A stretch of DNA of 64,000 nucleotides from Schmidtea nova (Eukaryota). The position numbers and the translations under genes were made by a program. Where the stretch lies: assembly GCA_044892505.1 (NCBI GenBank), contig CM097882.1:148180001-148244000 (forward strand), read 5' to 3'. The notes beneath the pieces were generated by a model that saw nothing but the letters and a program-made list of their open reading frames with translations, had not been told where the DNA came from and made no database searches. Below are positions 9,413 through 24,317 of the stretch, one piece after another; within the stretch, counting starts at the first letter, position 1; every line of letters begins with the position of its first letter.

Positions 9413-9485
9413 TTCTGATTATTCTACTGATTAATACCTGTTACATCGATTTGTACATTTTTACACACGGATTTTTCGCCTCTTT

Positions 9486-10646
9486 TTACACATCTGTCTC
9501 CTCTGGTTCATGGAACCCTTCATCTTGGAGTTCCATTGATGGTGGTGGTATAAACGGTAACCACACCACTCTACTTCTCCACATTGCAATTTCATCTTGA
9601 TACGTTCGAGAGATTTGTATCTCTTCATCTAACAGATACTCCATATAGTCTGATTGTTCGCTCAGAGTTTCGATTTGTCTTTCCATTTCTTCCATTTTTC
9701 TCTTAAGGGCTTCTACTTCTGTTGGTTCGGTTTCTACTTCTATGGTTTCTTTCTCTGCTTTCAGGGTTATTATCTGCTGTTTCAGTTCCTCGTTTTCTTT
9801 CGTCAAATTCGTTATGTTTTCCTCGTAAGCTCGGTTTGATTCCGCATGTCTTTCTTTCACTGCTTTCAACTCCATTTTCTTTTGAGTCACCACCCCTTGA
9901 TAACCATTTACATCTCTTTCCAGGCTTTCTTTTTCCCTGATCAACTTTTGTCTTTCCGCTTCCTCTTTCTGTCTAATGCCTCGCATTTCTCCATTTATCA
10001 TCTGTATTTGCCATTGCGTTTTCTTTAGTTCCTTTGACTGTTCTCGAATAAATCGCTGTCGTTTTCGACTCCATTCTTTGTTTGTCTGTTCTTGTCGCTT
10101 TCTCTGTTCCAATTCCTCTTTCAATTCGTCTATCTCTTGATACAATTTCCAATCTTCGCTGTGTGCTGTCCTTCTGATTATCTCTTTGGCTTCTTTATAC
10201 ACTCGTTTCGACTCCATCTTCCAATGTCTCGCTTGAGCTTTGATTGCTAGTATTTTTACCTCCATCTTTTCCTCTTGTTTCTCCCTCTCTTCTCTTCGCG
10301 TTTTCATCATGTTTTTGTACTGTTCTGCTTGTTTTCTCATCAATTGATAGGTCTCTTCTATCTTCTGTCGACTTCGTACATTCGTTCCTTTTAGCTTCTC
10401 TATTTGTGTTGTCAGTTGTAGTATCTCTTTATTCACTTCCTCGAATTCTAATTGATATAACTCCATTCGTCTTTCGCATTTTAGTTTCTCGTAGAAATTG
10501 TTTGTCATCACTTCGTGTAATTCCCTGGTTCTTTGTTCCACTTCCACTTTACATCTCCTTTCGATTTCTCTTTCTATTGCTTCTCGTTCGTTCGCCATCT
10601 CGTTTCTCGTTTCATCTTCGATTACATGTTCATTTGCATTTTCCAT
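9486..10646 (-). CDS. Long coiled-coil protein, 386 aa, ends in ETDV
   Basis: 1.16-kb ATG-initiated ORF, E/K/R/Q-rich with heptad character. Confidence 0.8.
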   Translation of the reverse strand: MENANEHVIEDETRNEMANEREAIEREIERRCKVEVEQRTRELHEVMTNNFYEKLKCERRMELYQLEFEEVNKEILQLTTQIEKLKGTNVRSRQKIEETYQLMRKQAEQYKNMMKTRREEREKQEEKMEVKILAIKAQARHWKMESKRVYKEAKEIIRRTAHSEDWKLYQEIDELKEELEQRKRQEQTNKEWSRKRQRFIREQSKELKKTQWQIQMINGEMRGIRQKEEAERQKLIREKESLERDVNGYQGVVTQKKMELKAVKERHAESNRAYEENITNLTKENEELKQQIITLKAEKETIEVETEPTEVEALKRKMEEMERQIETLSEQSDYMEYLLDEEIQISRTYQDEIAMWRSRVVWLPFIPPPSMELQDEGFHEPEETDV

Positions 10647-10735
10647 TCTGTAATTTACAAATTTACACTGGTTATACTATACGTTTATGGTTGTTGTCGA
10701 TTTTTACACTTTATTTACAGGGTCGTTCACTCTGA

Positions 10736-12073
10736 CTACTCTAACCATCCTTTCGTTGACTTCGTGTTCATCACTGTTGTACTTGTTTTCTTTTCGATTT
10801 CCAACTCTACGTATAGGTTGTCGTCGTACAACATTTCCCACATTTTTTGGTGTGGTATGAATTTTGGTTCTCCTGTCGCTAATGAACATTCGGTGGTTGG
10901 TCTTTTGTAAGCTTCGTGCTTACCATCGATTTTAAATATCCTCACGATCGTTTCTTTCGAGATTTTGACCCTCATTATCGCCTTTGTCTCTAGCGGCCAT
11001 TCTAATATATCGTCGTAACCACCTTTACACAACGCAAAGAATAATGACACATGCGTTTCCTTTCCTGATCCATCTCCATTTGGATAAATTCTCATCCGGA
11101 CTTTGTATCCGTTTTTCCACAGATAGAATGGTGGACTTGTTACCGACACTTGACTTCCTGCTTTTGCTGCTGCGAACTTTTCGTTGAAGTTCTTGATTTT
11201 CCATACATATGGTGCAACAGGTAAACTCTCGATATCCTCTGCATCTCGCACCCATATTTGATGTCGTACATTTACCTCCTTTACTAGCGTCTCTATGACT
11301 TTGATTTTCTCCATCATTTTCTCTCTGGTGAGCTCGAATTGCTCTCTCGTTTCCAGTAATAACTCCGTCATTATCCTCTGAGATTCGATTTCTTTTCCCA
11401 GCTTCTGTATGGTTTGTTCCATTCCGTTTAAATTTTCTGTTAACATCTCTGCGTGTTGTACCGTCTCTGTTTCTAAATGCTCTTTCATTTCTTTGCTCGT
11501 TTTCTTTACTACACATCCTTGTTTGCTCCATACGCACTTTCTTGGCCTTGCTTCACATCGTTCCCAATGTTCTCTCAACATCACCTCTTCTCCGGCTTCA
11601 CAATTACTTGGACAAATTCCTCTGAATTTTCCGCACACTTTCTCTTCTGCTACATTGAGATGTTCTGTTTCGATTATCTCTCTTGTCTCTCTTTGTTCAC
11701 AGTATTGACATTCTATTATTTCTGCTTTGCACTCGTTCTTGTGACTTTTCAGCTGCTTGATGGTTATTGTCTGTTGACACTTTTCGCATAGCGCTTTCTT
11801 GTTTTCGCATTTCTCCAGATGTTGTCTTAACTCGATTATTTGTCCTTTCCATTCGCATGGTTGGTTTATACACTCTGTTTTTATCTTCCAGATTTCCTTT
11901 TGGATTGCTTTGTCTGGTTTCGTCTCGTTGATTAGTAGTTTATCGTCACACTCTGGACACTTTCTTGTCTCACTTTCACTGATTATTTGCAATATACACT
12001 TGGTGCACATCCTGCATCCACATTCGGTTTGTCTCGGTTTCAACAGTAAATTTTTACACTTTACACACGTCAC
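10736..12073 (-). CDS. TRAF: TRAF-family protein (RING, TRAF zinc fingers, coiled coil, MATH)
   Basis: RING CVKC...CGCRMCTKC...CPEC; zinc fingers CINQPCEWKG...HLEKC; MATH motifs YVWKIKNF, SPPFY...GYKVRMRIYPNGDG, THVSLFF, DDILEWP. Confidence 0.95.
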   Translation of the reverse strand: MTCVKCKNLLLKPRQTECGCRMCTKCILQIISESETRKCPECDDKLLINETKPDKAIQKEIWKIKTECINQPCEWKGQIIELRQHLEKCENKKALCEKCQQTITIKQLKSHKNECKAEIIECQYCEQRETREIIETEHLNVAEEKVCGKFRGICPSNCEAGEEVMLREHWERCEARPRKCVWSKQGCVVKKTSKEMKEHLETETVQHAEMLTENLNGMEQTIQKLGKEIESQRIMTELLLETREQFELTREKMMEKIKVIETLVKEVNVRHQIWVRDAEDIESLPVAPYVWKIKNFNEKFAAAKAGSQVSVTSPPFYLWKNGYKVRMRIYPNGDGSGKETHVSLFFALCKGGYDDILEWPLETKAIMRVKISKETIVRIFKIDGKHEAYKRPTTECSLATGEPKFIPHQKMWEMLYDDNLYVELEIEKKTSTTVMNTKSTKGWLE

Positions 12074-12238
12074 ATTTACTCCTCATTGTCGATTCTCTCC
12101 TCTAAGAATCTTGATTGTTTGGTAGTCTGCTTCACTTTCTGCTCTCATTCTACAACAATATTTACATCAATTTCCCCATATTTTTGATTTTTTCTGGTTC
12201 TTTATTTACACGTATTTACACAATTTTCCGCTTATTCA

Positions 12239-12589
12239 CTATACATCCTCAGTTGAATCTGGCTCTGGATACACGTCTATTTCATTTACAATCCAGCTCG
12301 TCCAACTATCCGGTATCTCTTCCTCTTCATGTCTCGTTAATCTGTCAATTTCCTCTGCTTGCCAATTGTTTACTTCATTTAATGTTCGGTTCTCGTTCTG
12401 TAATTCGTTTATCTGTATTTGTTGGATCTCGATTTTGTTCATTGCTTCAAAATTACAGTTATAACTTTCGGTTAGTAATTGCGTTTTGGCCGTCAACTGG
12501 CTCTGTAATTCGTTTATTGTTCTGGCTAGCAGGTCACATTGCACTTTCCATCTTGTCATCATCGACATCTCTGTGGTTTCTTGATTCAT
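12239..12589 (-). CDS. Short coiled-coil protein, 116 aa
   Basis: ATG-initiated heptad-rich ORF with TATAAATA at 12651-12644 upstream. Confidence 0.6.
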   Translation of the reverse strand: MNQETTEMSMMTRWKVQCDLLARTINELQSQLTAKTQLLTESYNCNFEAMNKIEIQQIQINELQNENRTLNEVNNWQAEEIDRLTRHEEEEIPDSWTSWIVNEIDVYPEPDSTEDV

Positions 12590-12823
12590 CGTTTTTCTAG
12601 ATTATATACATCATTCTCTTTTTTCTGTTTTTATGTTTTATAATATTTATACCCATACGTATACGGTTATGCATTGGTTTTTACAATATTATTTACACTC
12701 ATATTCCACCCTCTATACAACTATCACTGGTTTTCCTTCGTACAGTTCCTCGTCCTCGATCTGTACCCACATCTCTTCAAAGGGTACAAAACAAGGATAT
12801 AAAGGTAAGTACGGTTTTTTTAA

Positions 12824-12962
12824 TGACTCATAGGTAAGATTTATTTGGATCACTCATTGGTATGGCTCATTGGTATGACTCATCAGTATGACTCATCAGT
12901 ATGACTCATCAGTATGACTCATTGGTATGACTCATCAGTATGACTCATCAGTATGACTCATC
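12824..12962. promoter_or_regulatory. Tandem 13-bp array of AP-1/GCN4-type sites (ATGACTCAT)
   Basis: Seven TGACTCA at 12876, 12889, 12902, 12915, 12928, 12941 and 12954, plus one at 12824. Confidence 0.75.
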
Positions 12963-13109
12963 AACAAATATTAACAAAGACAATGCAATCCATGTGCAAA
13001 GAAACAAAGACATTGCAATCCATGTGCAACGAAACAAAGACTAATGAAATATAATTTTTAATAATAATAATTTTTTGTACAGAGATAAATTGTGTGTGTG
13101 TGTGTGTTT

Positions 13110-13216
13110 AAGACAAATTACTGTACTCATTGAACGCGCGTTTCACGCGCGTTCTTCTTCCTTGTTTTATAAGACAAATCACAGTACTCATTGAACGCGC
13201 GTGAAACGCGCGTTCT
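13110..13216. repeat. 61-bp tandem unit with a perfect 10-bp-stem hairpin, loop inverted between copies
   Basis: GAACGCGCGT-TTC-ACGCGCGTTC (13132-13154) and GAACGCGCGT-GAA-ACGCGCGTTC (13193-13215); runs into an N-gap. Confidence 0.85.
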
Positions 13217-14389
13217 NNNNNNNNNNNNNNNNNNNNNNNNNNNNNNNNNNNNNNNNNNNNNNNNNNNNNNNNNNNNNNNNNNNNNNNNNNNNNNNNNNNN
13301 NNNNNNNNNNNNNNNNNNNNNNNNNNNNNNNNNNNNNNNNNNNNNNNNNNNNNNNNNNNNNNNNNNNNNNNNNNNNNNNNNNNNNNNNNNNNNNNNNNNN
13401 NNNNNNNNNNNNNNNNNNNNNNNNNNNNNNNNNNNNNNNNNNNNNNNNNNNNNNNNNNNNNNNNNNNNNNNNNNNNNNNNNNNNNNNNNNNNNNNNNNNN
13501 NNNNNNNNNNNNNNNNNNNNNNNNNNNNNNNNNNNNNNNNNNNNNNNNNNNNNNNNNNNNNNNNNNNNNNNNNNNNNNNNNNNNNNNNNNNNNNNNNNNN
13601 NNNNNNNNNNNNNNNNNNNNNNNNNNNNNNNNNNNNNNNNNNNNNNNNNNNNNNNNNNNNNNNNNNNNNNNNNNNNNNNNNNNNNNNNNNNNNNNNNNNN
13701 NNNNNNNNNNNNNNNNNNNNNNNNNNNNNNNNNNNNNNNNNNNNNNNNNNNNNNNNNNNNNNNNNNNNNNNNNNNNNNNNNNNNNNNNNNNNNNNNNNNN
13801 NNNNNNNNNNNNNNNNNNNNNNNNNNNNNNNNNNNNNNNNNNNNNNNNNNNNNNNNNNNNNNNNNNNNNNNNNNNNNNNNNNNNNNNNNNNNNNNNNNNN
13901 NNNNNNNNNNNNNNNNNNNNNNNNNNNNNNNNNNNNNNNNNNNNNNNNNNNNNNNNNNNNNNNNNNNNNNNNNNNNNNNNNNNNNNNNNNNNNNNNNNNN
14001 NNNNNNNNNNNNNNNNNNNNNNNNNNNNNNNNNNNNNNNNNNNNNNNNNNNNNNNNNNNNNNNNNNNNNNNNNNNNNNNNNNNNNNNNNNNNNNNNNNNN
14101 NNNNNNNNNNNNTTTCAACAAATATTTAAAAATAAAAACAAACAGATAAAAATGTCACAAATAACAACCAATTGATAAAAAAAAAATATAATAAAAATTT
14201 TAAAATAAAAAATTTATTTTCCTCAAAATAAATTCGTCACAATAATGTTTGTTAAAAATCAAAATCATCAATATTCTTTTTTCGCGTGAATTTTCTTTTT
14301 TCTTTAAAAATTTTTCTTATTGGCCTATAGTCTATAATAATAATAATAATAATAATAATGAATAAAATAAAATAAAAAATAAATTTACC

Positions 14390-17215
14390 TCAATATATAC
14401 CGGTGGATGTAGATGGCTGATCACGCAATTGCTGCTCCATCCTCACCAGGTATTCGTGGAGTCTGCGTGATTCAGCCGTTTCGCCATCATCGAATTCTTC
14501 ACCGTCATCATCAAATCCATCAGGTTCGGCTGGGGTATTGGTTTGATCATAACCTATAATAGTATTTTCTACCCTATAGTGCCCATATGCGAAACTTTTG
14601 TTTTTCGACACCCAATTGCGTTTGTCGTCGTTGCAATTGAGTGCCGTTTTTGTATTTTTCACACTGTAAACCTGATGATTTTTTGAGACTATACGAAACT
14701 GCGGGACTTTATATATTTTACTTGTTGTGTAACAGTCTAGGTAATTCGAATGGTTAAGTCCCGCAGTAGCCAAACATATGCCCTTGGCTTTTAAACACTC
14801 CTCGTCGCCAAGTAAACCATAGCATTTAGGCCGAAGAAAAACCCACTCTTCATATTTGAAGCCCTTATTTTCGTCCTTAAACTTTCCTATAACAGAATCC
14901 AAATTACGCGAAAATAAGGGATGGCTCGGGTCATAGTTTGAAGTATCTAAAAGTTGATCCCTCACCATAGCGGGCAAAAGAACAGAAAGCCTACAATTAA
15001 CAATTTCAAGAAAAAAGGAGTCTGTGTCTCCTGCTGCAATATTAATCTTACAATTAAACTCTTTCCTATATTTCTCTAACTCTATATATTGTAGTTCATA
15101 CATTCTTAGTTTAGACAAGTCCAAGACCGTCTGTCCTATATAACTTGGCCTATCTAAACACACAGACTCCTTCCTCAAAAGCACTGATATAAGATTATGG
15201 TCAATTTTCGTTGATTTTCTAAAATACGGGCTACTGCTATATGTAATTAATTTACGTGCCGAATTGCACAGTCTTAAATTGATACGTTTTTTCAGATTCT
15301 CTACGATTTTGCCGTAGAGACTGTTATTTAATAACTTAAAATAATTTTTGTCGAGTTTCGTGGTGGAAGAAGCTCTCAAAGCAGTATTTGTATCCACGTA
15401 TTTCTTAAAAAGCCTACTTTGATGATATTTAATAGCTCGATGAATTTTGGTCACTACAACACCTAACCTCAGAAACATCTGCAAAAGTCGCCAATGAAGC
15501 ACATAGTTTTTCTTAGGCATGTGCGTCAAAAGCAACTTATGCACCTTCGAACCTGGCACACACATCTTTTCAGCAGCTACTGGTAAATCATCCAGTAAGT
15601 CGTGAATAGATGCCGGTATCTCTAAATCCACTTCTATGGTATAACCATAGTTAAGTGAACATAAATCAACCGTAGTGCACTCCAACAAGATGTCATGAAG
15701 CAAGTGGTCATCCGTGACCCAAACAAAGTCCCCGTCCGGTAAGTTTTGTGAAAGAGCCCAGCCATACAGATTATTAATATCTATATACAGCAACTCTGTA
15801 TCTGGGCCTGATTTAACATGATGTTTATTAACGAAAGTGAGGCCGCCCCTGATTCCACCCTCAAAAAAGTTGTACATCTCCATATCTTGCAAAAGCTCGA
15901 TAGGAGATTCCAAAGTCATTAATGCAGAACACCAGCTCATACCTGGTATACCCAAAAAATTCAACGGCTCAAGTTTATTATGAGCTATACTCTTTGCACG
16001 AAATTGTTGAAAATAATCAGCCAAAAGAAATATGTCGAGTTTCATGTAAACCATCATATAATCAAATAATGAGGTACACGAATTTTCTCTCCATATTTCT
16101 TTTGCCTTTTCATAATCAGCAATTTCGACACCTTCCCAAATCGGCGGCAATTCAGTGGTCGACCTCAAGACAGATAAAGATGTAGCAACATCATATGGAA
16201 AAATTCCCTTACTGGTGATAATAGTCCCGGTAAATTCCGAAGAAGTAAGAGGAAAAGATGTTAGAGTTTTTACTAAGTTATTTAAAGATTCGCTAGCAAA
16301 TTGATACGAATCGATGAACTTCACTGTGAGTGATCCGATTCTCGCAAAAAGACTGAGAAACTTCTCACTGGTGACAGGAACACAGCTAATGTTCCACGAC
16401 TCGTATTTAGAAAGTCCGAATTTGAGGATATGATGTAAATCATATCCCCGTAGATTATGAAAAACTATCGGCAAAGTGTGTCGAATTTGCCTATTTATAT
16501 TACATTCGTTGCATGCTGCTCCTAGGTAAGCACCTGTAAAGTGATCGTGGTCTTTAACAGGATTTACTAAAATATTTTCACACAAGTAGCAGTGTGTTGC
16601 ATAAGAAAAATGTTGTATGTCTTCGTAGGTTAATATTATTTGCTTATTTTTATTTGCGAAATAATAGGGCGTTACGATTTTGCGACTTATATTTTCAATT
16701 TCTTGCAGGAATTTGGCAACGCAATCAAGGCCATAGAAGGATTTATATAATTTAACCCCAGTGAAATTATTAATAAGTAATAAACCCGCAGAAATGGGCA
16801 AATGTTTTTGGTAATATTTCGAGTCGTGAGGTAAAATTGCCTCAAAATCGGCATAAATTACAAAAGGAGGGGTCACTGTCTTCGTCCAGTCGCTAAAACG
16901 TAAAAATTTATTATTAGGAAGTGTATACAAAGTTGTGCCTATTTGGTTGGCATCACAAAGACCACGATGTCTCTTGAATGTATCTGAATTACGGAAGCCA
17001 TGCAAGCACCTAGGACACCATTTATTATAAATTCTCACTGGGGTTATCGCCGAAGTTTTACAATTTAAAAATTTGTCGATGTTATATATTCCTGCGTAAT
17101 GAAATTCTTTTTTATTTTCAATTAAAAGTAGGTTTATGACAGTGCCCCCCACTACTTTACTTTTATAGATAATATCGATGAATGGATGTTTCATCACTTC
17201 ACTTTTATTAGTCAA
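14390..17215 (-). CDS. polB: Family-B DNA polymerase, Polinton/Maverick (DNA_pol_B_2)-like, with a Zn/endonuclease-VII-like insert
   Basis: ExoI IYADFEA, ExoII FHNLRGYD, ExoIII YMKLD; motif A YIDINNLYG, motif B KLLNNSLYGK, motif C GDTDS; insert CYLC...DHDHFTG...ACNECN. First ATG is at 17194. Confidence 0.93.
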   Translation of the reverse strand: MTNKSEVMKHPFIDIIYKSKVVGGTVINLLLIENKKEFHYAGIYNIDKFLNCKTSAITPVRIYNKWCPRCLHGFRNSDTFKRHRGLCDANQIGTTLYTLPNNKFLRFSDWTKTVTPPFVIYADFEAILPHDSKYYQKHLPISAGLLLINNFTGVKLYKSFYGLDCVAKFLQEIENISRKIVTPYYFANKNKQIILTYEDIQHFSYATHCYLCENILVNPVKDHDHFTGAYLGAACNECNINRQIRHTLPIVFHNLRGYDLHHILKFGLSKYESWNISCVPVTSEKFLSLFARIGSLTVKFIDSYQFASESLNNLVKTLTSFPLTSSEFTGTIITSKGIFPYDVATSLSVLRSTTELPPIWEGVEIADYEKAKEIWRENSCTSLFDYMMVYMKLDIFLLADYFQQFRAKSIAHNKLEPLNFLGIPGMSWCSALMTLESPIELLQDMEMYNFFEGGIRGGLTFVNKHHVKSGPDTELLYIDINNLYGWALSQNLPDGDFVWVTDDHLLHDILLECTTVDLCSLNYGYTIEVDLEIPASIHDLLDDLPVAAEKMCVPGSKVHKLLLTHMPKKNYVLHWRLLQMFLRLGVVVTKIHRAIKYHQSRLFKKYVDTNTALRASSTTKLDKNYFKLLNNSLYGKIVENLKKRINLRLCNSARKLITYSSSPYFRKSTKIDHNLISVLLRKESVCLDRPSYIGQTVLDLSKLRMYELQYIELEKYRKEFNCKINIAAGDTDSFFLEIVNCRLSVLLPAMVRDQLLDTSNYDPSHPLFSRNLDSVIGKFKDENKGFKYEEWVFLRPKCYGLLGDEECLKAKGICLATAGLNHSNYLDCYTTSKIYKVPQFRIVSKNHQVYSVKNTKTALNCNDDKRNWVSKNKSFAYGHYRVENTIIGYDQTNTPAEPDGFDDDGEEFDDGETAESRRLHEYLVRMEQQLRDQPSTSTGIY

Positions 17216-17242
17216 GTCAACTAACGCATTTTCGTCATACGA

Positions 17243-17329
17243 TGAGTCATCGATGACGTCATTTATGAGTCATCGGGGGTCATGGATGACTCATCGATGA
17301 CGTCATTTCCTTTGTTCTGCGATGACTCA
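17243..17329. promoter_or_regulatory. Cluster of four AP-1 (TGA[C/G]TCA) and two CRE (TGACGTCA) sites in the ank-polB spacer
   Basis: AP-1 at 17243, 17266, 17287 and 17323; CRE at 17254 and 17298. Confidence 0.7.
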
Positions 17330-17345
17330 TGGTGCACACTTCTGT

Positions 17346-18614
17346 CTACTTCCACTGTATTGCGATATCCATGATGGAATTGTTCTTTCCATTTTTCCCT
17401 TCGATTTTGGCTCCTGCTTCGTATAACTCGTTTAGCACTTTGCAGTTCGTCTTCTTCCTTGCTGCGATTATCATGATTGTATCTCCGTTATCATCAACCG
17501 TATTCATATCTGCTTCGCACTTGACCATTGCTTTCGTTATTTCTAGCACTTCGTTTTCTTTCTTTCGACGTAATGCCCAGTGTATTGGCAATCTCCCATC
17601 TTTTGATAATAGGAATGCCACTGGCATTTGATTTTTGATCGTTTCTATGTCGGTCTCGTTATAATCTCCTTGTGCGTATCTGTGCACTTTCTCTGTAATT
17701 GCTCCTAATATCTCCAACGAATTTTTATTCTCTTTGAATTCCGATAATCTTTCCTGCGCTTTTGCTACGATTGCGTCTAGTCTCTCTTGGTAATCAGCTT
17801 TTGCGTTGAACAACACTGCTTTGCTTCTTATTCGTGTTTGCATCTGTTTCATCCGTTGGTCTTGATACACTGCTTGTCGGAAGAATTGTCCATACTTCAA
17901 TGCTTCCACCAGCTCTTTATATCGCTTGCTTATTTCTTTGTGCTGCTTTTGGATGTCATAGAAATGTTCGAAGCTCATATCCGGATTCCATTGCTTATCA
18001 CACCATTTCTTGATTAATCCGAATAATTCCCTCTTTCTGTCTTCCAACTTGTATTCTCTTGGGTTCTCGCTAACTCGTAACGTATCTCTCGCTATCAATA
18101 CTGCAAGTGTTTTTGGATCGTACGTTACTTCTAATAGATGTTTCAGTAACGCATTTTCTCCCCCTGTGAACACTTCATTACAATCTATGACCCACGAATC
18201 TCCTTCTGGCCGTTTCCACTTTAGCAATATTCTCCAGGTTCTACTGTTTCTTACTCCGATTGCTTGTTTCAGGATAGATCCTCTGGTTAGTTCATCGATT
18301 TCCCACGTGGCATTTTCCGTAATATACTTCAGTATTCGGTGATTCGCTCTATCAATTGCATGATTCAAGAATGTTCGTCCTTCTTTATCTTTTGTCATCC
18401 AATTCGATCTGGTGTTTCCGAAAAGCTTGATTATTTCATCGTTTCTTCCATGAATCGTCATCATCATAAGTGGAGTGATTCCTTCCCAATTTATTTTGTC
18501 GATCTCTCCTCCACCCTCGAGTATCATCTCTACGATCTCTTTTACTTTTTCGTTTCCACTGTGCTTGATTGCATTGTGCAACGCTGTGTTACCGTCTTTG
18601 TCTTGTAGATTCAA
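17346..18614 (-). CDS. Ankyrin-repeat protein (in-frame continuation of pol after one TAA)
   Basis: Repeats QDKDGNTALHNAI, NWEGITPLMM, KDKEGRTFLNHAI, SKDGRLPIHWAL, DDNGDTIMIIAA. There is no ATG start: the frame reads TAA-ACA-TTG directly after pol. Confidence 0.88.
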   Translation of the reverse strand: MNLQDKDGNTALHNAIKHSGNEKVKEIVEMILEGGGEIDKINWEGITPLMMMTIHGRNDEIIKLFGNTRSNWMTKDKEGRTFLNHAIDRANHRILKYITENATWEIDELTRGSILKQAIGVRNSRTWRILLKWKRPEGDSWVIDCNEVFTGGENALLKHLLEVTYDPKTLAVLIARDTLRVSENPREYKLEDRKRELFGLIKKWCDKQWNPDMSFEHFYDIQKQHKEISKRYKELVEALKYGQFFRQAVYQDQRMKQMQTRIRSKAVLFNAKADYQERLDAIVAKAQERLSEFKENKNSLEILGAITEKVHRYAQGDYNETDIETIKNQMPVAFLLSKDGRLPIHWALRRKKENEVLEITKAMVKCEADMNTVDDNGDTIMIIAARKKTNCKVLNELYEAGAKIEGKNGKNNSIMDIAIQWK

Positions 18615-18617
18615 TGT

Positions 18618-21600
18618 TTAAGGGATTTCCTCTAACAGCGTCCTTGTTATTGGATGTGCTGTTCTATCCTTTGCATACTCCATTACATTCTTTCGAACTT
18701 CTGTCAATATATTGAAATCGAGCCACCATTTCCATTCTGGTATAATTTCTCTGGTCCTCTTTGCAAGTTCCTTGATGTCTATTGCTTCTCTTCGATTGTC
18801 TTCTAGACTTGCTTGCGGCTTTGGTTGTACTCGCAACATATTAATTCTCGCCGTCTGTGATCTTGTCATCACCCGTTTCTCTGGTGATAGAGTTGCTGTC
18901 TTTGATATTTTCCTGCATCGACATGCATTCACGTATATTGGTCTTACCAATGGATTGTTCACCAATCGTACTCGCACATTATTTTCGTTCACTGTTGTTA
19001 TTTCATATGGCCCTTTGCCTGGTCGTTGGAGTTTCTTCACCGTACCGGGTATTATCTCTGGTGTTTCGATTATCACCCAATCTCCAACTTTTAAATCATG
19101 TGCTTTCACATTCTTTTTCTGATCATGCAGATCCTTGTAACTCTCTTGATAGAACTTGATGTTTAGTTCCGCCGTTTTCCAGATTTCTTGCATTCTTTCT
19201 TTGAACTTTGTAACGTAATCGTCAACCTCCATATACTGTGATAATGGTGGTTGGTACTCCAAATCGATTGGTAAGTTGCAATCTCTTCCGTACATCAGTT
19301 GGAATGGACTTAGCTTTGTTGCCGCATGTATTGACATTCTGTATGCCATTAAACACAGGTTTATATACTCGTCCCAGTCAGTCTGATGTTTACTGACGTA
19401 ATTTGACAACATGCCTATCAATGTTCCATTGAATCTTTCTGTTTGTCCGTTCGTTTGTGGATGGTATGGGGATGTTCGTAATTTCGCAATTCGGAAGTAG
19501 TTCGTAACTTCGTCTAATATTTCACTCATGAAATTCGTTCCTTGATCCGTTAGGATTTTCTTTGGTGTTCCGTATCTGCAGCATATCTCTTCCACCAATA
19601 TTCTCGCGACTGTTTTTGCCTTTTGATTCGGCATTGTGAATGCTTCTGGGAACTTTGTTAGATAGTCCGTGACTACTAATATATACTGATTCCCTTTTAA
19701 ACTTTCCGGCAATGGCCCAACTACGTCCATTGCTATCGTCGCCATAGGTTCTGCAGGTATTGGCATAGGTTTCAGTGGTGTTTTCCACTTCGTTCCGACG
19801 TTCTTTCTTGTCGCACAGGTTACGCAGTTCTTTATCCATTCTTTCACATCATCTTCCATGGTTGGCCAAAAATACTTTTGCCTCAATCTCCCGATTGTCT
19901 TTTTCGCTGACATATGTCCGCCTAATTTTCCGTCATGATATTGAGTCATGATTTCCTTTCGTCTATTCGCAGGTAAGCACATCAATCTCCGTTCTCCATC
20001 TTGTATCAATAACCATCCTTTTTCCAACACGTATCTATGTTGATATTTCTGCATATGTTCGCGTAACACTTGGTTCTTGCCGAATATTTCTATCCCCCTT
20101 TCTTTCAAATACTTGCTGATCAATCCCAACTCCTCGTCTTCGAGTTGATCTTTCCTTAATTCGCTGAAATCCAAATCCTCCGCTATTAATGCACATATTT
20201 TTAGAGCGTTCAGGTTCACCAATTCTGGAAATGTAAACCTTGACATGCAATCCGCGTTTGCATTTGATTTTCCTGCTTTAAACTTTATGAACGGTGAGTA
20301 TTCTTGTAACTGCATCGCCCAACGCATCAATCTACTTGATGATTCTTTATGTTGACCTAACCATACCAATGGTTGATGATCCGTCGAGATATATATTTCA
20401 TGACCCCACAATAGGTATTTGAAATGCTTGATTGCCAATATTATCGCATAGGCTTCTCTTTCCGTGACTGAGTAATTTCTTTCATGCTTCCTGAATGTTC
20501 GACTGTAATATCCAATTACTCTTTCCTTGCCTTCTTCATCGAATTGGCCTAGTACTGCTCCTGCTGCATATCCACTTGCGTCTGTTGCCAACAGAAATGG
20601 CTTCTTAAAATCTGGATGGACCAATATTGGCGCTGTAATCAGCTTGTCTCGTAATGTCTCAAATGCTGCTTGCTGTTCTGCTCCCCACACAAACGACACA
20701 TCTTGTCTTACCAATTCCTGCATTGGCTTTGATATTCCTGCATAGTCCTTGATAAACTTTCGATAATATCCACACAATCCCAAAAATTCTTGTATTTGAG
20801 TCACTGTCTTTGGTGGTGGACATTCTTTGACTTTCTCAATATTCCTTGGATCTGGTTCTTTACCTTTTGCTGATACAATGTGACCTAAGAATGTCACTTT
20901 CTCTTTTGCCCAATCGCATTTGGACGGCTTCAATTTCAGTTTCCACTGTCTCAATTTCACGAACACATTTCTGATATCTTGTAAGTGATCTTCAAATGTT
21001 GCGGAGTAGATTAATAGATCGTCGATATACACCATGCATTGTTTTATGCCATGTGTTACGAAATTCATGCATCTCTGGAATGATGCTGGCGCGTTTGTTA
21101 ACCCAAACGGCATTTTCTTGAATTGGTACAGATCTCGTCCGATTGTGAAAGCTGTCTTTTCTTTATCCTCGTCTTTCATTTTTATCTGCCAAAATCCGCT
21201 TTTTAAATCCAGTGACGTGAAATAGGCTGCTCCTTGTAGCGTCAACAACATTTCGTTTATGTCTGGCAGTGGGTACGTGTCTCTTTTCGTAACGGCATTT
21301 AATCGTCTGTAATCGATACAGAATCTCTGAGTTCCATCCTTCTTTTTCACCATCACCACTGGGAATTGCCAGGGTGAGCAACTAGGTTCGATGACCTCTG
21401 CATCTAACATCTTTTGTACCTCTTCTTCTGCTACTGCTTTTTGAGCTTCTGCCAGTTTATATGGTCGTAATGCGATTGGCGTTTCGTCCGTCAACGGTAT
21501 CGTGTGTAATGTTACATCGCATGTTCCTAAATCTAAATCCGATGCTGCGAATATATCTTGATACTCCATCAACAGTTTCTGTAGCTGTTCTTTTTGTCGT

Positions 21601-24317
21601 TCATCCAACAACACACTGTCGATTTTCCATGGTAATTCGCCTTTGCCTTTCTCATTCTTGTCTGGTATTTCGATTTCGGACATGGGTGTCAATTTACCCA
21701 AATTCTCATTCTCGTATATTATCTTGTCCTCTTCGTTGAAGTTTACCAGATTAATCGGTATCTCACCTTCTTGGTTTATCGTAACCAGTTCTCTTGCCAT
21801 TGGTAATTCCTTCTTCGCTTCGAACTTCTTACTTGGTTCGAATATCATGTCTCCTTTTATTGTCGAATCGATCTTGACATAGCACATCATTTCGTGCCTC
21901 GCTGGCACTACTATTTGTTCCGCATTTGCCACTTTAACTTTCATTCTGCAGATTTTTCCTGTTCTATCTTTTAGTTTCATTGCTCCTAGATCAATTACGA
22001 TTTCCTTGAACAGGTCTGGCATCAGGTCAGTTCCAATAATACATGGTACACTCAGCGATGGTATTACAGCGATGTACGTGTTGATCTCTGCACCTCGATG
22101 CTTAATTTTTACAAACCATCTTCCGGCTACTTCTACTGTCTCTTGACTGCACGCGATTACATGTACATTCGTCTTCTCGATTTCTCCTTGGTTTTTCTCT
22201 GGTATATAGTTAATGTCGATTGCTGAAATATTTGCGCCTGTATCGATCATGGCTTCGATTTCTCTTCCGTTTATTTCTACGGTTGTTGTTAAGATCGGTC
22301 CCATATTTGTGGACATAACTGCTATCGTGTGTGTGTCTTCTAACGAGTCTACGCTTCTACCTCGTTTTACTTTGCATCCTTCGGGAATTATCGGGTATAT
22401 ACTTGTCATCGGCATCATCTGTATCATATTCGGCTTCGCTTTGTATATCGGTTCGTTATACATTGACTGAGGTGGAGCGCTGTATCTCCAATTCTCAACT
22501 GCACTCTTTTCGTTATACTGTGGGATCTGGTTTATATTCGCTTGTCCTCCTTGATCGTCATCGTCATCGTTGCTTGAATCATCTTGTGTTCGATATCCCC
22601 TCACTCTTTCCCATAATCCTTTCCTTTCTTTCTTTAGTTGTCGTCTTGCTTGCTCATCTTGCATTATCTTTTTGAATTTCCTTCCAACATCTTCATTTGT
22701 TCCTTTCATTTTTGCAAGTATTTTCAACAATCTCTTTATTCGATGTATGTCTTTTGAGTGTCCGTGTAACACCATTGTTTTCGCGAGAAATGGTAAATAC
22801 CCTACTACCATTTTCCAATTCACTTTCTTTTCTCTCTTGTAGATATCGAAACACGCTAACATTTGCGTAATTATCACTCTGACGATTTGTATTATCAATA
22901 TAACACCCAGTATTCCAGCCATCATTTGTCCGAATATCAGGAATCTTCCCCACATTGCCTTCATCATATTTTCTGTGGCTTTCTTGAAATGTGCCGGTGA
23001 CAACAGCAGTTCATAATTCGGTCCTTCTCGATAATTCGTTCCTCCCGTTATCGTTACGATATTTGACAGTAATGCTTCTCTTCTTGCCGGGAATAATATA
23101 TTCTGCCTTGCTGCTTCCAAATCTTTTGGACTATAGATTCCGTTGTTTGAGACATCTACGTCGCTGAATTGTCTATCTTTTGATAACTGCATTAGCTCAA
23201 ATTCTCTTGGTGCTATCACTTCGGTTCTTCCTGGGAACATAACCCATTTGCCATCTGGCTTCTGATAAAGCGGTCCGTACGCGTTACTACAGTTGAATGG
23301 ATTTGGTTCAAAACCTGGTGGATTGATGATTCTCGTCACCGGTTGAACGTATCGTACTTTTCCTTTATAATCGATTTCTAGTTCGTTTGTACATTGTCCA
23401 GGTTTCAACTGCGTTGTTGCTGCTAGCGATGCATGTGTCTTTTCGCAAATGTATACATACATTGCCTCTCCAACCACTCTTCCGAAATGTCCTTCTCTCA
23501 GTGGTAATAATGGCATCGCGCTATCTGGATTAGTAATCGCTACGGCCAACTTTGTCTTCAATATTTCTCGATTCAGTATACAATCGTTGTTTATCAGATC
23601 GTAGTACACTTTTTGTAATGAGGCTTGTCCTCTATGGAATAAGAAGTCCATTTTATTATTCACATACAAGTGTAGTTTGATATCCATTGTGTCGATTTTG
23701 GGTTTCGCATTCGGCACTTCCTGCTTTGACACGTATATTCCTGGATAGTTCGTTTCGTATACCGTTGTACTACACTTAAGGGTTGCTTTCCCTTTTATGA
23801 ATCTCATTCCCACATCCTGATTTGTGGTTATCAACACTGTTGGTGTGGTTCTCATCTCTATCCGTTTTTCTCTATGATCTGGTTTCAGTTGTCTTTTGTT
23901 CTCTAAAGCCTCTTTGAGATGTTTTGCTCTAGCTTTGTCATCATCGTCTTCTTCCTGGAACGTTTTTCCTTGAATTTCGTCGAACTTTGCTCCTTGTAGC
24001 AGTTGTAATTGACATTCGTTCATTTTTGGTTTGTATACCAATGTTGACATTCCCGTTTGACACATGCTCCTGTCAATTTTACACATGGATAACGTTTTCA
24101 TTTCTCCTGTGGTCGGTTCGAAGAATGCTTCGTAGCTTTTCAGTTCGACTATATACGTATCCATCACCACTAAGTTGGTTGCGGGTACTCCGAATATTGG
24201 GTAGGTTTCTCCTTGACAATATCCTTCTCCTCCCGTAATCCGTCCTGCTACATAATACGTCTGTTGCAACATCATTCGTGGTTTTCCTTTTATCTTTATT
24301 TTGTCTCTCGTTGTCAC
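18618..24317 (-). CDS. pol: Env(C-terminal part)-Pol fusion ORF: class III glycoprotein ectodomain and TM, then PR, RT, RNase H, integrase
   Basis: Glycoprotein segments YVNNKMDF...NDCILNREIL, GEAMYVYIC, NGIYSPKDL...ILFP and TM FLIFGQMMAGILGVILIIQIV. PR IDTGA; RT YIDD; RH TDAS, TDHQPL; IN H-H-C-C, MDVVGP, TDQG, TERFN, GPY. Confidence 0.96.
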   Translation of the reverse strand: MTTRDKIKIKGKPRMMLQQTYYVAGRITGGEGYCQGETYPIFGVPATNLVVMDTYIVELKSYEAFFEPTTGEMKTLSMCKIDRSMCQTGMSTLVYKPKMNECQLQLLQGAKFDEIQGKTFQEEDDDDKARAKHLKEALENKRQLKPDHREKRIEMRTTPTVLITTNQDVGMRFIKGKATLKCSTTVYETNYPGIYVSKQEVPNAKPKIDTMDIKLHLYVNNKMDFLFHRGQASLQKVYYDLINNDCILNREILKTKLAVAITNPDSAMPLLPLREGHFGRVVGEAMYVYICEKTHASLAATTQLKPGQCTNELEIDYKGKVRYVQPVTRIINPPGFEPNPFNCSNAYGPLYQKPDGKWVMFPGRTEVIAPREFELMQLSKDRQFSDVDVSNNGIYSPKDLEAARQNILFPARREALLSNIVTITGGTNYREGPNYELLLSPAHFKKATENMMKAMWGRFLIFGQMMAGILGVILIIQIVRVIITQMLACFDIYKREKKVNWKMVVGYLPFLAKTMVLHGHSKDIHRIKRLLKILAKMKGTNEDVGRKFKKIMQDEQARRQLKKERKGLWERVRGYRTQDDSSNDDDDDQGGQANINQIPQYNEKSAVENWRYSAPPQSMYNEPIYKAKPNMIQMMPMTSIYPIIPEGCKVKRGRSVDSLEDTHTIAVMSTNMGPILTTTVEINGREIEAMIDTGANISAIDINYIPEKNQGEIEKTNVHVIACSQETVEVAGRWFVKIKHRGAEINTYIAVIPSLSVPCIIGTDLMPDLFKEIVIDLGAMKLKDRTGKICRMKVKVANAEQIVVPARHEMMCYVKIDSTIKGDMIFEPSKKFEAKKELPMARELVTINQEGEIPINLVNFNEEDKIIYENENLGKLTPMSEIEIPDKNEKGKGELPWKIDSVLLDERQKEQLQKLLMEYQDIFAASDLDLGTCDVTLHTIPLTDETPIALRPYKLAEAQKAVAEEEVQKMLDAEVIEPSCSPWQFPVVMVKKKDGTQRFCIDYRRLNAVTKRDTYPLPDINEMLLTLQGAAYFTSLDLKSGFWQIKMKDEDKEKTAFTIGRDLYQFKKMPFGLTNAPASFQRCMNFVTHGIKQCMVYIDDLLIYSATFEDHLQDIRNVFVKLRQWKLKLKPSKCDWAKEKVTFLGHIVSAKGKEPDPRNIEKVKECPPPKTVTQIQEFLGLCGYYRKFIKDYAGISKPMQELVRQDVSFVWGAEQQAAFETLRDKLITAPILVHPDFKKPFLLATDASGYAAGAVLGQFDEEGKERVIGYYSRTFRKHERNYSVTEREAYAIILAIKHFKYLLWGHEIYISTDHQPLVWLGQHKESSSRLMRWAMQLQEYSPFIKFKAGKSNANADCMSRFTFPELVNLNALKICALIAEDLDFSELRKDQLEDEELGLISKYLKERGIEIFGKNQVLREHMQKYQHRYVLEKGWLLIQDGERRLMCLPANRRKEIMTQYHDGKLGGHMSAKKTIGRLRQKYFWPTMEDDVKEWIKNCVTCATRKNVGTKWKTPLKPMPIPAEPMATIAMDVVGPLPESLKGNQYILVVTDYLTKFPEAFTMPNQKAKTVARILVEEICCRYGTPKKILTDQGTNFMSEILDEVTNYFRIAKLRTSPYHPQTNGQTERFNGTLIGMLSNYVSKHQTDWDEYINLCLMAYRMSIHAATKLSPFQLMYGRDCNLPIDLEYQPPLSQYMEVDDYVTKFKERMQEIWKTAELNIKFYQESYKDLHDQKKNVKAHDLKVGDWVIIETPEIIPGTVKKLQRPGKGPYEITTVNENNVRVRLVNNPLVRPIYVNACRCRKISKTATLSPEKRVMTRSQTARINMLRVQPKPQASLEDNRREAIDIKELAKRTREIIPEWKWWLDFNILTEVRKNVMEYAKDRTAHPITRTLLEEIP

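What the first reader, a model, noticed from the sequence alone, without database searches (positions are those of the whole stretch)
14390..17215. Full-length Polinton-type DNA polymerase B inside an LTR retroelement
Seen: an uninterrupted ORF of more than 930 aa, co-oriented with pol, starting about 150 nt after the ankyrin stop, with all exonuclease and polymerase motifs intact. No Polinton ATPase, capsid, protease, separate integrase or TIRs are visible. Established: this polymerase family belongs to Polintons and related dsDNA viruses, and retroelements copy their genome with RT alone. Inference: a captured polymerase could finish plus-strand synthesis of an oversized genome with proofreading, or amplify an episomal DNA form, making this a retro/DNA-virus hybrid.
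Basis: partly seen in the sequence, partly recalled or inferred. Interest (0 to 1): 0.92.

Follow-up and report, generated by a model that had tools for sequence, protein, structure and literature searches.

The report
Truncated Polinton polymerase inside planarian retroelement
A real, intact-looking DNA-virus-type polymerase gene sits inside a young 31-kb "Burro-like" retrovirus-like element of a flatworm-type genome, but it lacks its priming domain and looks like a very recent passenger fragment, not a working part of a retro/DNA-virus hybrid.

Summary
The ORF is real: 14390-17215 on the minus strand, 941 codons, first ATG at 17194. [quoted passage not shown] Relatives reach 59 % identity and lie in canonical Polintons. 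All 115 invariant columns are kept, and the fold matches phi29, adintovirus and bidnavirus-type polymerases.

It lies inside a 31,266-bp LTR retroelement (5480-36745). The LTRs are 3.2 kb and 99.6 % identical, and the target-site duplication is CAGG. The architecture matches the published planarian "Burro" giant Gypsy elements.

It is not full length. About 350 N-terminal residues are missing, covering the terminal-protein domain and the Cys half of the vOTU domain.

The block is compositionally foreign. Third-codon AT skew is -0.17, as in native Polinton PolBs, against +0.27 to +0.68 in every Burro gene window. No other Polinton gene or TIR is present. Two Burro-like relatives with readable sequence after pol, and the published Burro domain lists, lack PolB.

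Best reading: a recently acquired Polinton gene fragment, either nested after integration or transduced shortly before. There is no evidence that it replicates the element.

The decisive test, a survey of other copies in the same genome, could not be run because the host genome is in none of the collections. An 896-nt gap hides the 3' junction.

The parts
5480..36745 (-). Burro-like giant Gypsy-type LTR retroelement, 31,266 bp, one insertion event
   Evidence: Two 3.2-kb direct repeats differing by 10 mismatches and one 3-nt gap. TG...CA termini and the identical 4-bp flank CAGG on both sides. Domain content. Matches the published Burro description (PMC6431247).
33543..36745 (-). 5' LTR in element orientation
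5480..8685 (-). 3' LTR in element orientation
17346..29632 (-). gag - env-like - PR - RT - RNase H - IN - ankyrin polyprotein region, given as one part. Domains: CCHC knuckle about 28688-28738; fusion-glycoprotein domain 22836-23861; PR 22014-22286; RT 20874-21350; RNase H 20298-20687; IN 19419-19973; ankyrin repeats 18312-18611 and about 17349-17612. In this copy it is read in two frames (one frame change after gag, possibly programmed), and the env-pol-ankyrin frame has three internal in-frame stops.
   Evidence: Pfam hits; counts only; domain coordinates. Env in the same frame as PR-RT-RH-IN, as described for Burro.
14390..17215 (-). Polinton-type protein-primed PolB gene, 5'-truncated once (about 350 N-terminal codons absent). 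First ATG at 17194; frame open from 17269. Retained C-terminal piece of vOTU with the invariant His, 17051-17194; CCHC finger 16955-17017; ExoI 16832-16864; Endonuclease VII/HNH-like insert 16496-16597; ExoII 16430-16468; ExoIII 16016-16060; motif A 15752-15787; motif B 15296-15337; motif C 15011-15031; KxY-like 14870-14887. Unique acidic and helical tail 14393-14557.
13000..17270 (-). Compositionally foreign, Polinton-like block; bounds approximate. The left edge lies between 17195 and about 17345. The right edge lies between about 12980 and the gap or inside it.
   Evidence: AT skew on the coding strand is about 0 here and +0.3 to +0.5 on both sides. Third-position skew is -0.17 against +0.50, chi-square p 1.6e-59, with no overlap of 900-nt windows.
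14113..14389 (-). Very AT-rich (15 % GC) stretch after the PolB stop. It resembles the AT-rich repeat region that follows PolB in the Polinton of L004.
13217..14112 (.). Run of N (896 nt). It hides the 3' junction of the block and was not filled.
17242..17330 (.). Cluster of four ATGASTCAT (AP-1-like) and two TGACGTCA (CRE-like) palindromes between the ankyrin end and the PolB ATG. It contains a 24-nt unit present twice.
12823..12978 (.). Tandem array with a 13-nt period and eight ATGASTCAT sites, on the far side of the gap and upstream of the 3' accessory genes
   Evidence: Similar arrays lie upstream of gag in the Burro-like locus L007.
8888..12589 (-). 3' accessory genes with Burro-type composition: 116-aa coiled-coil-like ORF 12239-12589; TRAF-like gene 10736-12073 (RING, TRAF zinc finger, MATH); 386-aa ORF 9486-10646; 174-aa ORF 8888-9412
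32525..32983 (-). RING-finger (zf-C3HC4_3) ORF between the 5' LTR and gag

Best explanation
[quoted passage not shown] It lost its 5' end, meaning the terminal-protein domain and the Cys half of the vOTU domain.

Together with some 3' flank, it is embedded as a foreign block of about 3-4.4 kb in the 3' accessory region of one young Burro-like giant Gypsy retroelement of a planarian-type genome. It is a very recent arrival.

It got there by one of two routes. One is a DNA-level insertion or rearrangement in this copy after integration. The other is transduction-type capture (read-through plus non-homologous recombination) shortly before the last retrotransposition. The second route is plausible because Burro-like elements and Polintons lie side by side and co-oriented in a related assembly.

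Shown: identity, truncation, foreign composition, absence of the rest of a Polinton, and absence from the Burro-like relatives that could be read.

Inferred: it is a passenger. The element is still copied by its own RT. Without a terminal protein and TIR origins the polymerase cannot start protein-primed replication of anything on its own. If it is transcribed, that would be from the LTR-driven genomic RNA or from the adjacent AP-1/CRE-like site cluster.
For: Identity:
- More than 2,500 homologues, the best at 59 % identity, with precomputed PF03175 plus PF02945.
- The closest relatives with context (L003, L009, L001) are canonical Polintons with an rve integrase, an A32-like ATPase, an adenain-like protease and convergent small ORFs.
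- The window's protein groups with these in a distance tree, with an ordinary branch length.
- The AF2 model (pLDDT 86) matches phi29 polymerase at E 1e-19 and TM 0.7, and adintovirus and bidnavirus-type PolBs at E 1e-57 to 1e-48.

Truncation:
- Homology starts at residue 349 of P0001.
- An invariant Cys-Phe (20 of 20) lies in the missing part, 109 residues before the invariant His that the window keeps.
- The TP-vOTU-Exo-palm architecture comes from PMC11161782.
- tblastn with the N-terminal 360 residues of seven relatives found nothing elsewhere in the window; the only matches were two short ones at the PolB's own 5' edge.

Foreign and recent:
- Third-position AT skew is -0.17 in PolB and -0.18 to +0.04 in four native Polinton PolBs.
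- It is +0.36 to +0.64 in gag, pol, ankyrin, TRAF, RING and orf386.
- The 900-nt window ranges do not overlap, and p = 1.6e-59.

Not a family feature:
- L006 and L007 lack PolB after pol. L005 has a whole Polinton next to it.
- None of 20 IMG/VR PolB loci has an RT.
- Burro domain lists in PMC6431247 do not include PolB.

Disruptive junction: the ankyrin region ends after the first helix of a repeat, and no continuation was found.

Youth explains intactness: LTR divergence is 0.3-0.4 %, which predicts only about 5 substitutions in 2.8 kb.
Against: - Only one copy could be examined, so presence in sister copies is untested.
- The ORF is perfectly open and co-oriented, and it retains every conserved catalytic column.
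- It starts at a Met that its three closest relatives also have at that position.
- It sits directly downstream of a cluster of AP-1/CRE-like sites of the kind that Burro-like relatives carry upstream of gag. That is what a newly recruited, independently expressed accessory gene would look like.
- Burro elements are known collectors of accessory domains.
- The element's TSD and near-identical LTRs show it integrated as a unit. Nothing excludes that PolB was already on board.
- The retroelement's own polyprotein frame carries three internal stops while PolB has none. Both a later arrival and chance could produce this.
- The 3' junction is hidden by the gap.
Confidence: 0.68

Rival explanations
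1. Genuine accessory gene of a Burro subfamily. The polymerase core was captured and is retained by selection. It is expressed from the internal AP-1/CRE-like cluster or a subgenomic RNA. It acts on primed DNA, for example by completing or proofreading the long plus strand or by amplifying unintegrated DNA, without needing its own terminal protein.
For: Intact catalytic core. Co-orientation and a tidy start at a conserved Met. A site cluster immediately upstream. A 31-kb genome is unusually long for RT alone, and Burro elements accumulate cargo. There is a precedent for a Polinton PolB moving into another virus class, the bidnavirids.
Against: No terminal-protein domain and a split vOTU. No compositional amelioration, whereas ankyrin, TRAF and RING cargo are fully Burro-like. 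Absent from the Burro-like relatives that could be read and from published Burro inventories. Intactness is expected from youth. The neighbouring ankyrin region looks clipped.
Confidence: 0.12
2. Strictly post-integration nesting. A Polinton, a piece of Polinton DNA or a processed copy of its PolB transcript landed in this particular Burro copy after it had integrated, with loss of the rest. It has never passed through reverse transcription. This is one of the two routes inside the best explanation, listed separately because it is the reader's own refutation scenario.
For: Fully native Polinton composition. An AT-rich 3' flank like that behind PolB in L004. A clipped ankyrin end. Polintons are present and piRNA-targeted in planarians (PMC8532177). 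Burro-like and Polinton sequences are found adjacent in two loci of another assembly.
Against: No TIRs, no TSD of its own and no other Polinton gene. It would require an insertion plus deletions within the short time allowed by 99.6 % identical LTRs, while leaving a clean 941-codon ORF in the sense orientation.
Confidence: 0.4
3. Assembly artefact. The scaffold joins a Burro copy to Polinton sequence, or two different Burro copies across the gap, so the arrangement does not exist in the genome.
For: An 896-nt run of N lies directly behind the PolB block. Burro elements are a known assembly problem (PMC11410931). One contig of the comparison assembly looks chimeric (L006).
Against: The ankyrin-PolB junction lies in uninterrupted sequence. 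The two LTRs share one TSD and are 99.6 % identical, as expected for a single element spanning the gap.
Confidence: 0.05

Closest known systems
Burro / GYPSM1 giant Gypsy-like LTR retroelements of planarians (Grohme et al. 2018; Jurka 2007; reviewed in PMC6431247)
   Same: More than 30 kb long with multi-kb LTRs. Gag with CCHC knuckles. A mononegavirus-type fusion glycoprotein domain in frame between gag and PR-RT-RH-IN. Ankyrin, MATH/TRAF and RING cargo. An AT-rich (>70 % A/T) host.
   Different: No PolB is listed among Burro1-4 or Dugesia tigrina domains. In this copy the polyprotein is split (one frame change, three internal stops) and TRAF is a separate downstream gene. The closest database relatives of its RT-IN are only 51-54 % identical. 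It is therefore Burro-like, not one of the described families as far as could be tested.
Polinton/Maverick (and adintovirus) protein-primed PolB
   Same: 59 % identity to PolBs that lie in canonical Polintons. All Exo and Pol motifs present. The Endonuclease VII/HNH-type insert is shared with relatives. The fold is phi29-like.
   Different: Lacks the TP domain and the Cys half of vOTU. No integrase, capsid, ATPase, protease or TIRs accompany it. It has a 55-residue acidic and helical C-terminal tail longer than in any of 24 relatives.
Bidnaviridae (parvovirus lineage that acquired a Polinton PolB; PMC11161782)
   Same: A Polinton PolB gene moved into a different class of element. Bidnavirus- and 'densovirus'-labelled PolBs are among the best structural matches.
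   Different: [quoted passage not shown] Here the TP is gone, the recipient is a reverse-transcribing element, and there is no sign of use.
Gene transduction by retroviruses and LTR retrotransposons (onc capture; reviewed in PMC6431247)
   Same: A co-oriented, 5'-truncated foreign gene lies in the 3' half of an LTR element whose own reading frame is defective, with non-homologous junctions.
   Different: The captured gene comes from another mobile element, not the host. No element genes appear to have been replaced except perhaps the end of the ankyrin region. Whether the block ever passed through reverse transcription is unknown.
Teratorn (piggyBac-herpesvirus fusion; PMC5601938, PMC10175614)
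   Same: A physical chimera of two classes of mobile or viral element.
   Different: Teratorn is a complete fusion in many copies with both gene sets retained. Here there is one copy, with a single truncated gene from the second partner.

Membership tests
[quoted passage not shown] | ExoI-III and polymerase motifs A, B, C and KxY with their catalytic residues | tested here: met
   D123/E125, N254/D259, Y390/D394, D479/Y484, K627/Y634-G635, D730-T-D732 and K780 are invariant in 25 sequences. 115 of 115 invariant columns are kept.
[quoted passage not shown] | Direct match to the Pfam model PF03175 | tested here: inconclusive
   No hit even at E <= 10 for the window's protein. Relatives at 59 % identity score 1e-31 to 1e-32, and most homologues carry a precomputed PF03175 hit. 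The reason for the miss is unexplained.
[quoted passage not shown] | phi29-like fold (the protein-primed subgroup) | tested here: met
   The nine best PDB matches are all phi29 polymerase chains, at E 1e-19 to 1e-16 and target TM 0.62-0.71. RNA/DNA-primed PolBs follow at E 1e-11 or worse with TM < 0.32. The TPR1 and TPR2 subdomains were not delimited separately.
[quoted passage not shown] | N-terminal terminal-protein (TP) domain followed by a vOTU protease domain (eukaryotic pPolBs; PMC11161782) | tested here: not met
   Alignment starts at residue 349 of P0001. Twenty of 24 relatives have 207-485 residues before that point. The invariant Cys lies in the missing part and only the invariant His is retained. 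No N-terminal homology was found elsewhere in the window; the only matches were two short ones at the PolB's own 5' edge. Calling these domains TP and vOTU rests on the paper, not on a fold test here.
Polinton/Maverick element | rve-type integrase, DJR major and minor capsid proteins, A32-like ATPase and adenain-like protease next to PolB | tested here: not met
   tblastn with all called proteins of three Polinton loci found only PolB pieces, generic RING similarity and the retroelements' own integrases. The 896-nt gap is too short for these genes.
Polinton/Maverick element | Terminal inverted repeats and a TSD of its own around the block | tested here: not met
   No inverted repeat pair brackets the block. 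The right edge is partly hidden by the gap.
Burro-like giant Gypsy LTR retroelement | LTRs with TG..CA ends and a TSD; PR-RT-RH-IN order; total length above 30 kb | tested here: met
   Length is 31,266 bp.
Burro-like giant Gypsy LTR retroelement | Env-like fusion glycoprotein domain in frame between gag and pol; gag with CCHC knuckles; ankyrin, MATH/TRAF and RING cargo | tested here: met
   PF24664 at 1.8e-55 lies in the same open frame as PR-RT-RH-IN. zf-CCHC, Ank_2, MATH_2/TRAF and zf-C3HC4_3 hits. Features as listed in PMC6431247.
Burro-like giant Gypsy LTR retroelement | Sequence relationship to the described Burro1-4 / GYPSM1 | not testable with these tools
   No Burro reference sequence is reachable. 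The closest RT-IN in 15 billion proteins is 54 % identical, from unnamed ENA contigs with the same env-in-frame architecture.
   Exact-match scans for an ankyrin 29-mer and an LTR 26-mer found nothing. No PolB above 59 % identity and no fragment above 52 % exists in the protein collection.
   Third-position skew is identical to native Polinton PolBs and outside the range of all Burro genes. The gene is truncated and the neighbouring ankyrin end looks clipped.

The most novel reading that the evidence does not exclude
The truncated polymerase is a newly recruited accessory gene of an active Burro subfamily. It would be transcribed from the internal AP-1/CRE-like site cluster. It would be used either as a primer-dependent, proofreading, strand-displacing polymerase that helps complete the 31-kb DNA copy, or as a terminal-protein-less decoy that interferes with resident Polintons. 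That would be the first reverse-transcribing element known to carry a family B DNA polymerase.
Probability: 0.12. Interest if true: 0.8.

Novelty: new member of a known kind. Interest (0 to 1): 0.35.

Why it matters
If the block is a one-off passenger, the finding is an ordinary case of one mobile element ending up inside another. Its value is then limited to three points:
- it documents a Burro-like giant retroelement with a clean TSD and near-identical LTRs;
- it shows that Polintons and Burro-like elements exchange or interrupt each other in flatworm-type genomes;
- it illustrates how third-codon composition can date cargo inside a retroelement.

If sister copies carry the same block, it would be the first DNA-virus replication gene captured by a retroelement. 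It would also be a live example of how chimeric virus lineages such as bidnavirids begin, and it would bear on how a 31-kb retroelement genome is copied. A simple copy survey in the source genome decides between these.

Tried and rejected
- **Direct family and structure-sequence searches.** Pfam and PDB sequence searches with the protein gave no polymerase hit. A profile of 25 sequences reached phi29 only at E 0.2. Family assignment therefore rests on homologues, conserved columns and fold.
- **Search for other copies.**
  - Exact scans of metagenome and viral contigs with a Burro ankyrin 29-mer and an LTR 26-mer gave 0 hits.
  - A short junction-proximal PolB query for fragments gave at most 52 % identity.
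  - A filter-free search of 1.8 billion representatives with RT-IN gave at most 54 % identity.
  - The host genome is not in the collections.
- **IMG/VR relatives of PolB.** They are 25-33 % identical, on contigs of 5.6-23 kb (most 14-23 kb), and none has an RT.
- **AP-1/CRE-like arrays as a Polinton feature.** I first considered this because L002 has such an array behind a PolB fragment. I rejected it because that array is 94-96 % identical to the region upstream of gag in the Burro-like L007.
- **A shared truncation point with L004's PolB.** That would have pointed to one ancestral capture. I rejected it because L004's homology starts much further upstream, at residue 222 of P0001.
- **Which element is nested in which in L004/L005.** A 300-400-nt direct repeat lies at the contig start and just before PolB. 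It has no clear LTR end, so this stays unresolved.
- **RING ORF shared between the Burro element and Polintons.** The similarity is limited to the RING domain, 36 % over about 40 residues, and is too generic to claim exchange.
- **Continuation of the clipped ankyrin repeat downstream of the block.** None was found.
- **Literature.** No report was found of a PolB inside an LTR retroelement.
Full report
**1. Observation**

The ORF listing finds an ORF at 14390-17215 on the minus strand, with 941 codons from a TTG. The first ATG is codon 8 at 17194, and the frame is open from 17269. At this composition, a 941-codon open frame has a chance probability of about 2e-30. The ORF is co-oriented with the retroelement genes. 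The ATG lies 151 nt after the end of the ankyrin-repeat coding region at 17346.

The window contains four runs of N. One of them, 13217-14112 (896 nt), starts 277 nt after the PolB stop. It was not filled.

**2. The protein**

Direct searches were unhelpful. Pfam reports only a weak Endonuclease VII match at residues 207-240 and no PF03175, even at E <= 10. PDB sequence search finds nothing.

The homology search is unambiguous.
- More than 2,500 proteins match, the best at 59 % identity over 94 % of the query. Most carry precomputed PF03175 (DNA_pol_B_2) and PF02945 hits.
- Relatives rescanned here hit PF03175 at 1e-31 to 1e-32.
- In an alignment of 25 sequences, every exonuclease and polymerase motif residue is invariant and present in the window's protein.
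- The window's protein keeps 115 of 115 columns invariant in the other 24 and 75 of 80 near-invariant ones, as the relatives do among themselves.
- Its branch in a distance tree is not elongated.

The structure agrees.
- An AlphaFold2 model has pLDDT 86 and pTM 0.81.
- Its best solved matches are phi29 DNA polymerase chains, at E 1e-19 and target TM 0.62-0.71. Other family B polymerases fall far behind.
- Its best viral matches are bidnavirus- and 'densovirus'-labelled, adintovirus, MELD-virus and adenovirus polymerases.

The protein is therefore a protein-primed family B polymerase of the Polinton/adintovirus group. The Endonuclease VII/HNH-type insert is shared with its relatives. Such inserts are known in Polinton pPolBs (PMC11161782).

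**3. It is not full length**

BLASTP against the closest relative, P0001 (1242 aa), starts at that protein's residue 349. Twenty of 24 relatives have 207-485 residues before that point.

According to PMC11161782, Polinton pPolBs begin with a terminal-protein (TP) domain that primes DNA synthesis. A vOTU cysteine protease domain follows, before the exonuclease and palm domains.

In the part that the window lacks, the relatives have an invariant Cys-Phe (20 of 20). It lies 109 residues upstream of an invariant His (24 of 24) that the window keeps as H39. This fits a Cys...His dyad cut in two.

tblastn with the N-terminal 360 residues of seven relatives finds no such sequence elsewhere in the window. 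The only matches were two short ones at the PolB's own 5' edge. Weak similarity to the relatives continues for some 20 codons upstream of the ATG and then ends.

The ATG itself is a Met that the three closest relatives also have at that position. The C-terminal 55 residues are acidic with one helix and are modelled with low confidence. They form a tail longer than in any relative.

**4. The surrounding element**

A self-comparison shows two 3,206-bp direct repeats at 5480-8685 and 33543-36745. They differ by 10 mismatches and one 3-nt gap. They start with TG and end with CA, and are flanked on both sides by CAGG. This is one LTR-element insertion of 31,266 bp, and it spans the gap.

On the minus strand, the element carries the following, in order:
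- a RING-finger ORF;
- gag with CCHC knuckles;
- a Monjiviricetes-type fusion glycoprotein domain (PF24664, 1.8e-55), in the same open frame as PR, RT, RNase H and IN;
- ankyrin repeats;
- the PolB block;
- a 116-aa ORF;
- a TRAF-like gene with RING, TRAF zinc finger and MATH domains;
- two further ORFs.

This is the architecture described for the planarian Burro/GYPSM1 giant Gypsy-like elements (PMC6431247). That description includes the otherwise unique env domain in frame between gag and pol, and the ankyrin, MATH/TRAF and RING cargo. The AT-rich flanks fit planarian genomes, which are >70 % A/T (PMC11410931). PolB is not among the domains reported for Burro1-4 or the Dugesia tigrina element.

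In this copy, gag is in one frame. The env-pol-ankyrin region is in another frame that carries three internal in-frame stops (counts only). The frame change could be programmed. The stops suggest a defective copy.

**5. The PolB block is compositionally foreign**

| Region | Measure | Value |
|---|---|---|
| Retroelement genes | AT skew, coding strand | +0.30 to +0.51 |
| PolB | AT skew, coding strand | +0.01 |
| 277 nt behind the PolB stop | GC content | 15 % |
| Burro genes, pooled | third-codon AT skew | +0.50 |
| Burro genes, 34 windows of 900 nt | third-codon AT skew, minimum | +0.27 |
| PolB | third-codon AT skew | -0.17 |
| PolB, 7 windows of 900 nt | third-codon AT skew, maximum | -0.13 |
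| Four native Polinton PolBs | third-codon AT skew | -0.18 to +0.04 |

The pooled difference between Burro genes and PolB has chi-square p = 1.6e-59.

The ankyrin, TRAF-like and RING genes are presumably also acquired cargo. They are fully Burro-like in composition.

The skew changes between about 17200 and 17350 on one side, and between about 12700 and 13000 on the other.

The inference is that PolB has been copied as part of this element for very little time, if at all.

**6. Nothing else of a Polinton is present**

I ran tblastn with every called protein of three Polinton loci. It finds only PolB, a generic RING match and the integrases of the window's two retroelements. No inverted repeats bracket the block.

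The AT-rich stretch after the stop resembles the AT-rich tandem-repeat region that follows PolB in the Polinton of L004.

The ankyrin coding region ends after the first helix of an ankyrin repeat, and no continuation is found downstream. The left junction may therefore have clipped it.

**7. Relatives elsewhere**

The closest PolBs with context lie in canonical Polintons.
- L003 has an rve integrase with chromodomain, an A32-like ATPase, Bcl-2 and TBP ORFs.
- L009 has an adenain-like protease.
- L001 is also a canonical Polinton.

The closest relatives of the Burro-like RT-IN are 51-54 % identical, and most carry the same env-in-frame architecture. All four that were looked up come from one ENA assembly.
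- L006 (pol followed by an ankyrin ORF) and L007 have no PolB.
- L008 ends too early to tell.
- In L004/L005, a Burro-like polyprotein is followed 4 kb downstream by a complete, co-oriented Polinton.
- In L002, a PolB fragment abuts sequence that is 94-96 % identical to the region upstream of gag in L007.

So the two element classes do land next to or inside each other. A co-oriented adjacency of this kind is what a read-through capture would need. Which element is nested in which in L004/L005 could not be settled. One contig of that assembly, L006, looks chimeric, so these adjacencies carry a caveat.

Polintons are present and piRNA-targeted in Schmidtea (PMC8532177).

**8. What could not be tested**

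The host genome is absent from every collection.
- No protein is closer than 59 % to PolB or 54 % to RT-IN.
- There are no exact matches to ankyrin or LTR oligomers.

**9. Interpretation**

- **Shown:** a Polinton-derived, 5'-truncated but catalytically intact-looking pPolB gene lies as a young, compositionally foreign block in the accessory region of a young Burro-like element.
- **Inferred:** it is a passenger.
- **ORF intactness:** the LTR divergence predicts about five substitutions in 2.8 kb since integration. By my own rough estimate, that gives well under one expected stop. An open frame is therefore not evidence of selection.
- **Function:** without TP, without the complete vOTU and without TIR origins, the enzyme cannot start protein-primed replication by itself. 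This inference follows the model in PMC11161782.

Two routes remain open.
- **Insertion or rearrangement after integration.** I put this at about 0.4.
- **Transduction-type capture shortly before the last retrotransposition.** I put this at about 0.3. A minority of that, about 0.12 overall, is real recruitment as an accessory gene.

Features that keep recruitment alive:
- the clean start at a conserved Met;
- co-orientation with the element;
- the cluster of four ATGASTCAT and two TGACGTCA palindromes immediately upstream;
- an eight-site ATGASTCAT array on the far side of the gap.

ATGASTCAT has 13 matches in the window, 12 of them in these two clusters, against 0.78 expected. There are none in the LTRs. 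Burro-like relatives carry such arrays upstream of gag. The block therefore appears to sit within, or next to, an internal regulatory module of the element.

**10. Novelty**

No report of a family B polymerase inside an LTR retroelement was found. On present evidence this is a known kind of element (Burro-like) carrying a nested or transduced fragment of another known kind (Polinton).

- My first notebook entry lists raw ORF bounds from the ORF listing in the polyprotein region. I wrote it before I recognised these ORFs as pieces of one reading frame.
- The output lists per-segment tblastn bounds for PolB genes of fetched relatives. This shows where their frames change. Neither is repeated here.
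- In one search, I laid two overlapping fetched stretches of one public contig end to end, unchanged, for a self-comparison.
- Consensus lines printed by the alignment tools were not used.

Noticed in passing
window 17242-17330 and 12823-12978; L007 928-1466; L002 1360-1829: Dense clusters of the AP-1-like palindrome ATGASTCAT, with two CRE-like TGACGTCA in the first cluster, flank the PolB block. There are 13 matches in the window, 12 of them in these two clusters, against 0.78 expected, and none in the LTRs. Burro-like relatives carry 51-nt-period arrays of the same motif upstream of gag. This is possibly an internal promoter or enhancer for the 3' accessory genes.
   Followed up: partly
window 5870-7258 and 33933-35321 (inside both LTRs): Each 3.2-kb LTR contains two sense-strand ORFs of 193 and 208 aa with no Pfam match, in the most GC-rich part (46-49 %) of the element.
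   Followed up: no
window 32525-32983; L001 2411-2863; L004 18630-19052; L003 12382-13431: The Burro-like element has a small zf-C3HC4_3 RING ORF, and so do two Polinton relatives (36 % identity over the RING only). One Polinton relative also carries Bcl-2 and TBP ORFs, and Burro elements are reported to carry BCL2-like and BIR motifs. The two element classes may draw on a similar pool of apoptosis- and ubiquitin-type cargo.
   Followed up: partly
window 14390-17215: Pfam does not report PF03175 for this protein even at E <= 10, although relatives at 59 % identity score 1e-32. The reason is unexplained.
   Followed up: partly
window 14393-14557: The PolB ends in a 55-residue acidic stretch plus one helix that none of 24 relatives has at that length. 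It is modelled with low confidence, and its origin is unknown.
   Followed up: no
window 13109-13216: Two 47-nt repeats, each holding the palindrome-like GAACGCGCG(N5)CGCGCGTTC, abut the gap. They are followed by a (CA)n run and two 30-nt repeats at 12973-13032. Whether they belong to the Burro element or to the foreign block is unknown.
   Followed up: no
window 8888-9412: The last ORF before the 3' LTR (174 aa) has a weak GP41-like match (E 0.002), although the element already has an env-like domain between gag and pol.
   Followed up: no
window 45405-51894: A second, unrelated Gypsy-like RT-RNase H-IN ORF lies at 46504-49686 on the plus strand, 31 % identical to the Burro-like pol. It is followed by a 465-aa ORF without family hits. 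The region is GC-rich and bracketed by an inverted 100-nt match at 45405-45505 and 51796-51894.
   Followed up: partly
L001 and L002 (ENA ERZ25039515): In two Polinton relatives, the N-terminal (TP/vOTU) part and the polymerase part of PolB are called as separate ORFs in different frames, with one frame change each. This may be a shared defect or a regular feature of that Polinton family.
   Followed up: no
L006 17034-24564: The contig that carries a Burro-like element continues into genes with bacterial-type Pfam hits (Bac_luciferase, NAD_binding, MnhB). That assembly probably contains chimeric contigs.
   Followed up: no
L005 2-396 and 15964-16355: A 400-nt direct repeat (90 % identity) containing TATA-like motifs lies at the contig start and immediately upstream of the Polinton PolB. 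It could be an LTR remnant or a shared promoter module.
   Followed up: partly
window 31488-31808: Tandem repeats (about 78-83 % identity between copies) lie in the region between the RING ORF and gag.
   Followed up: no
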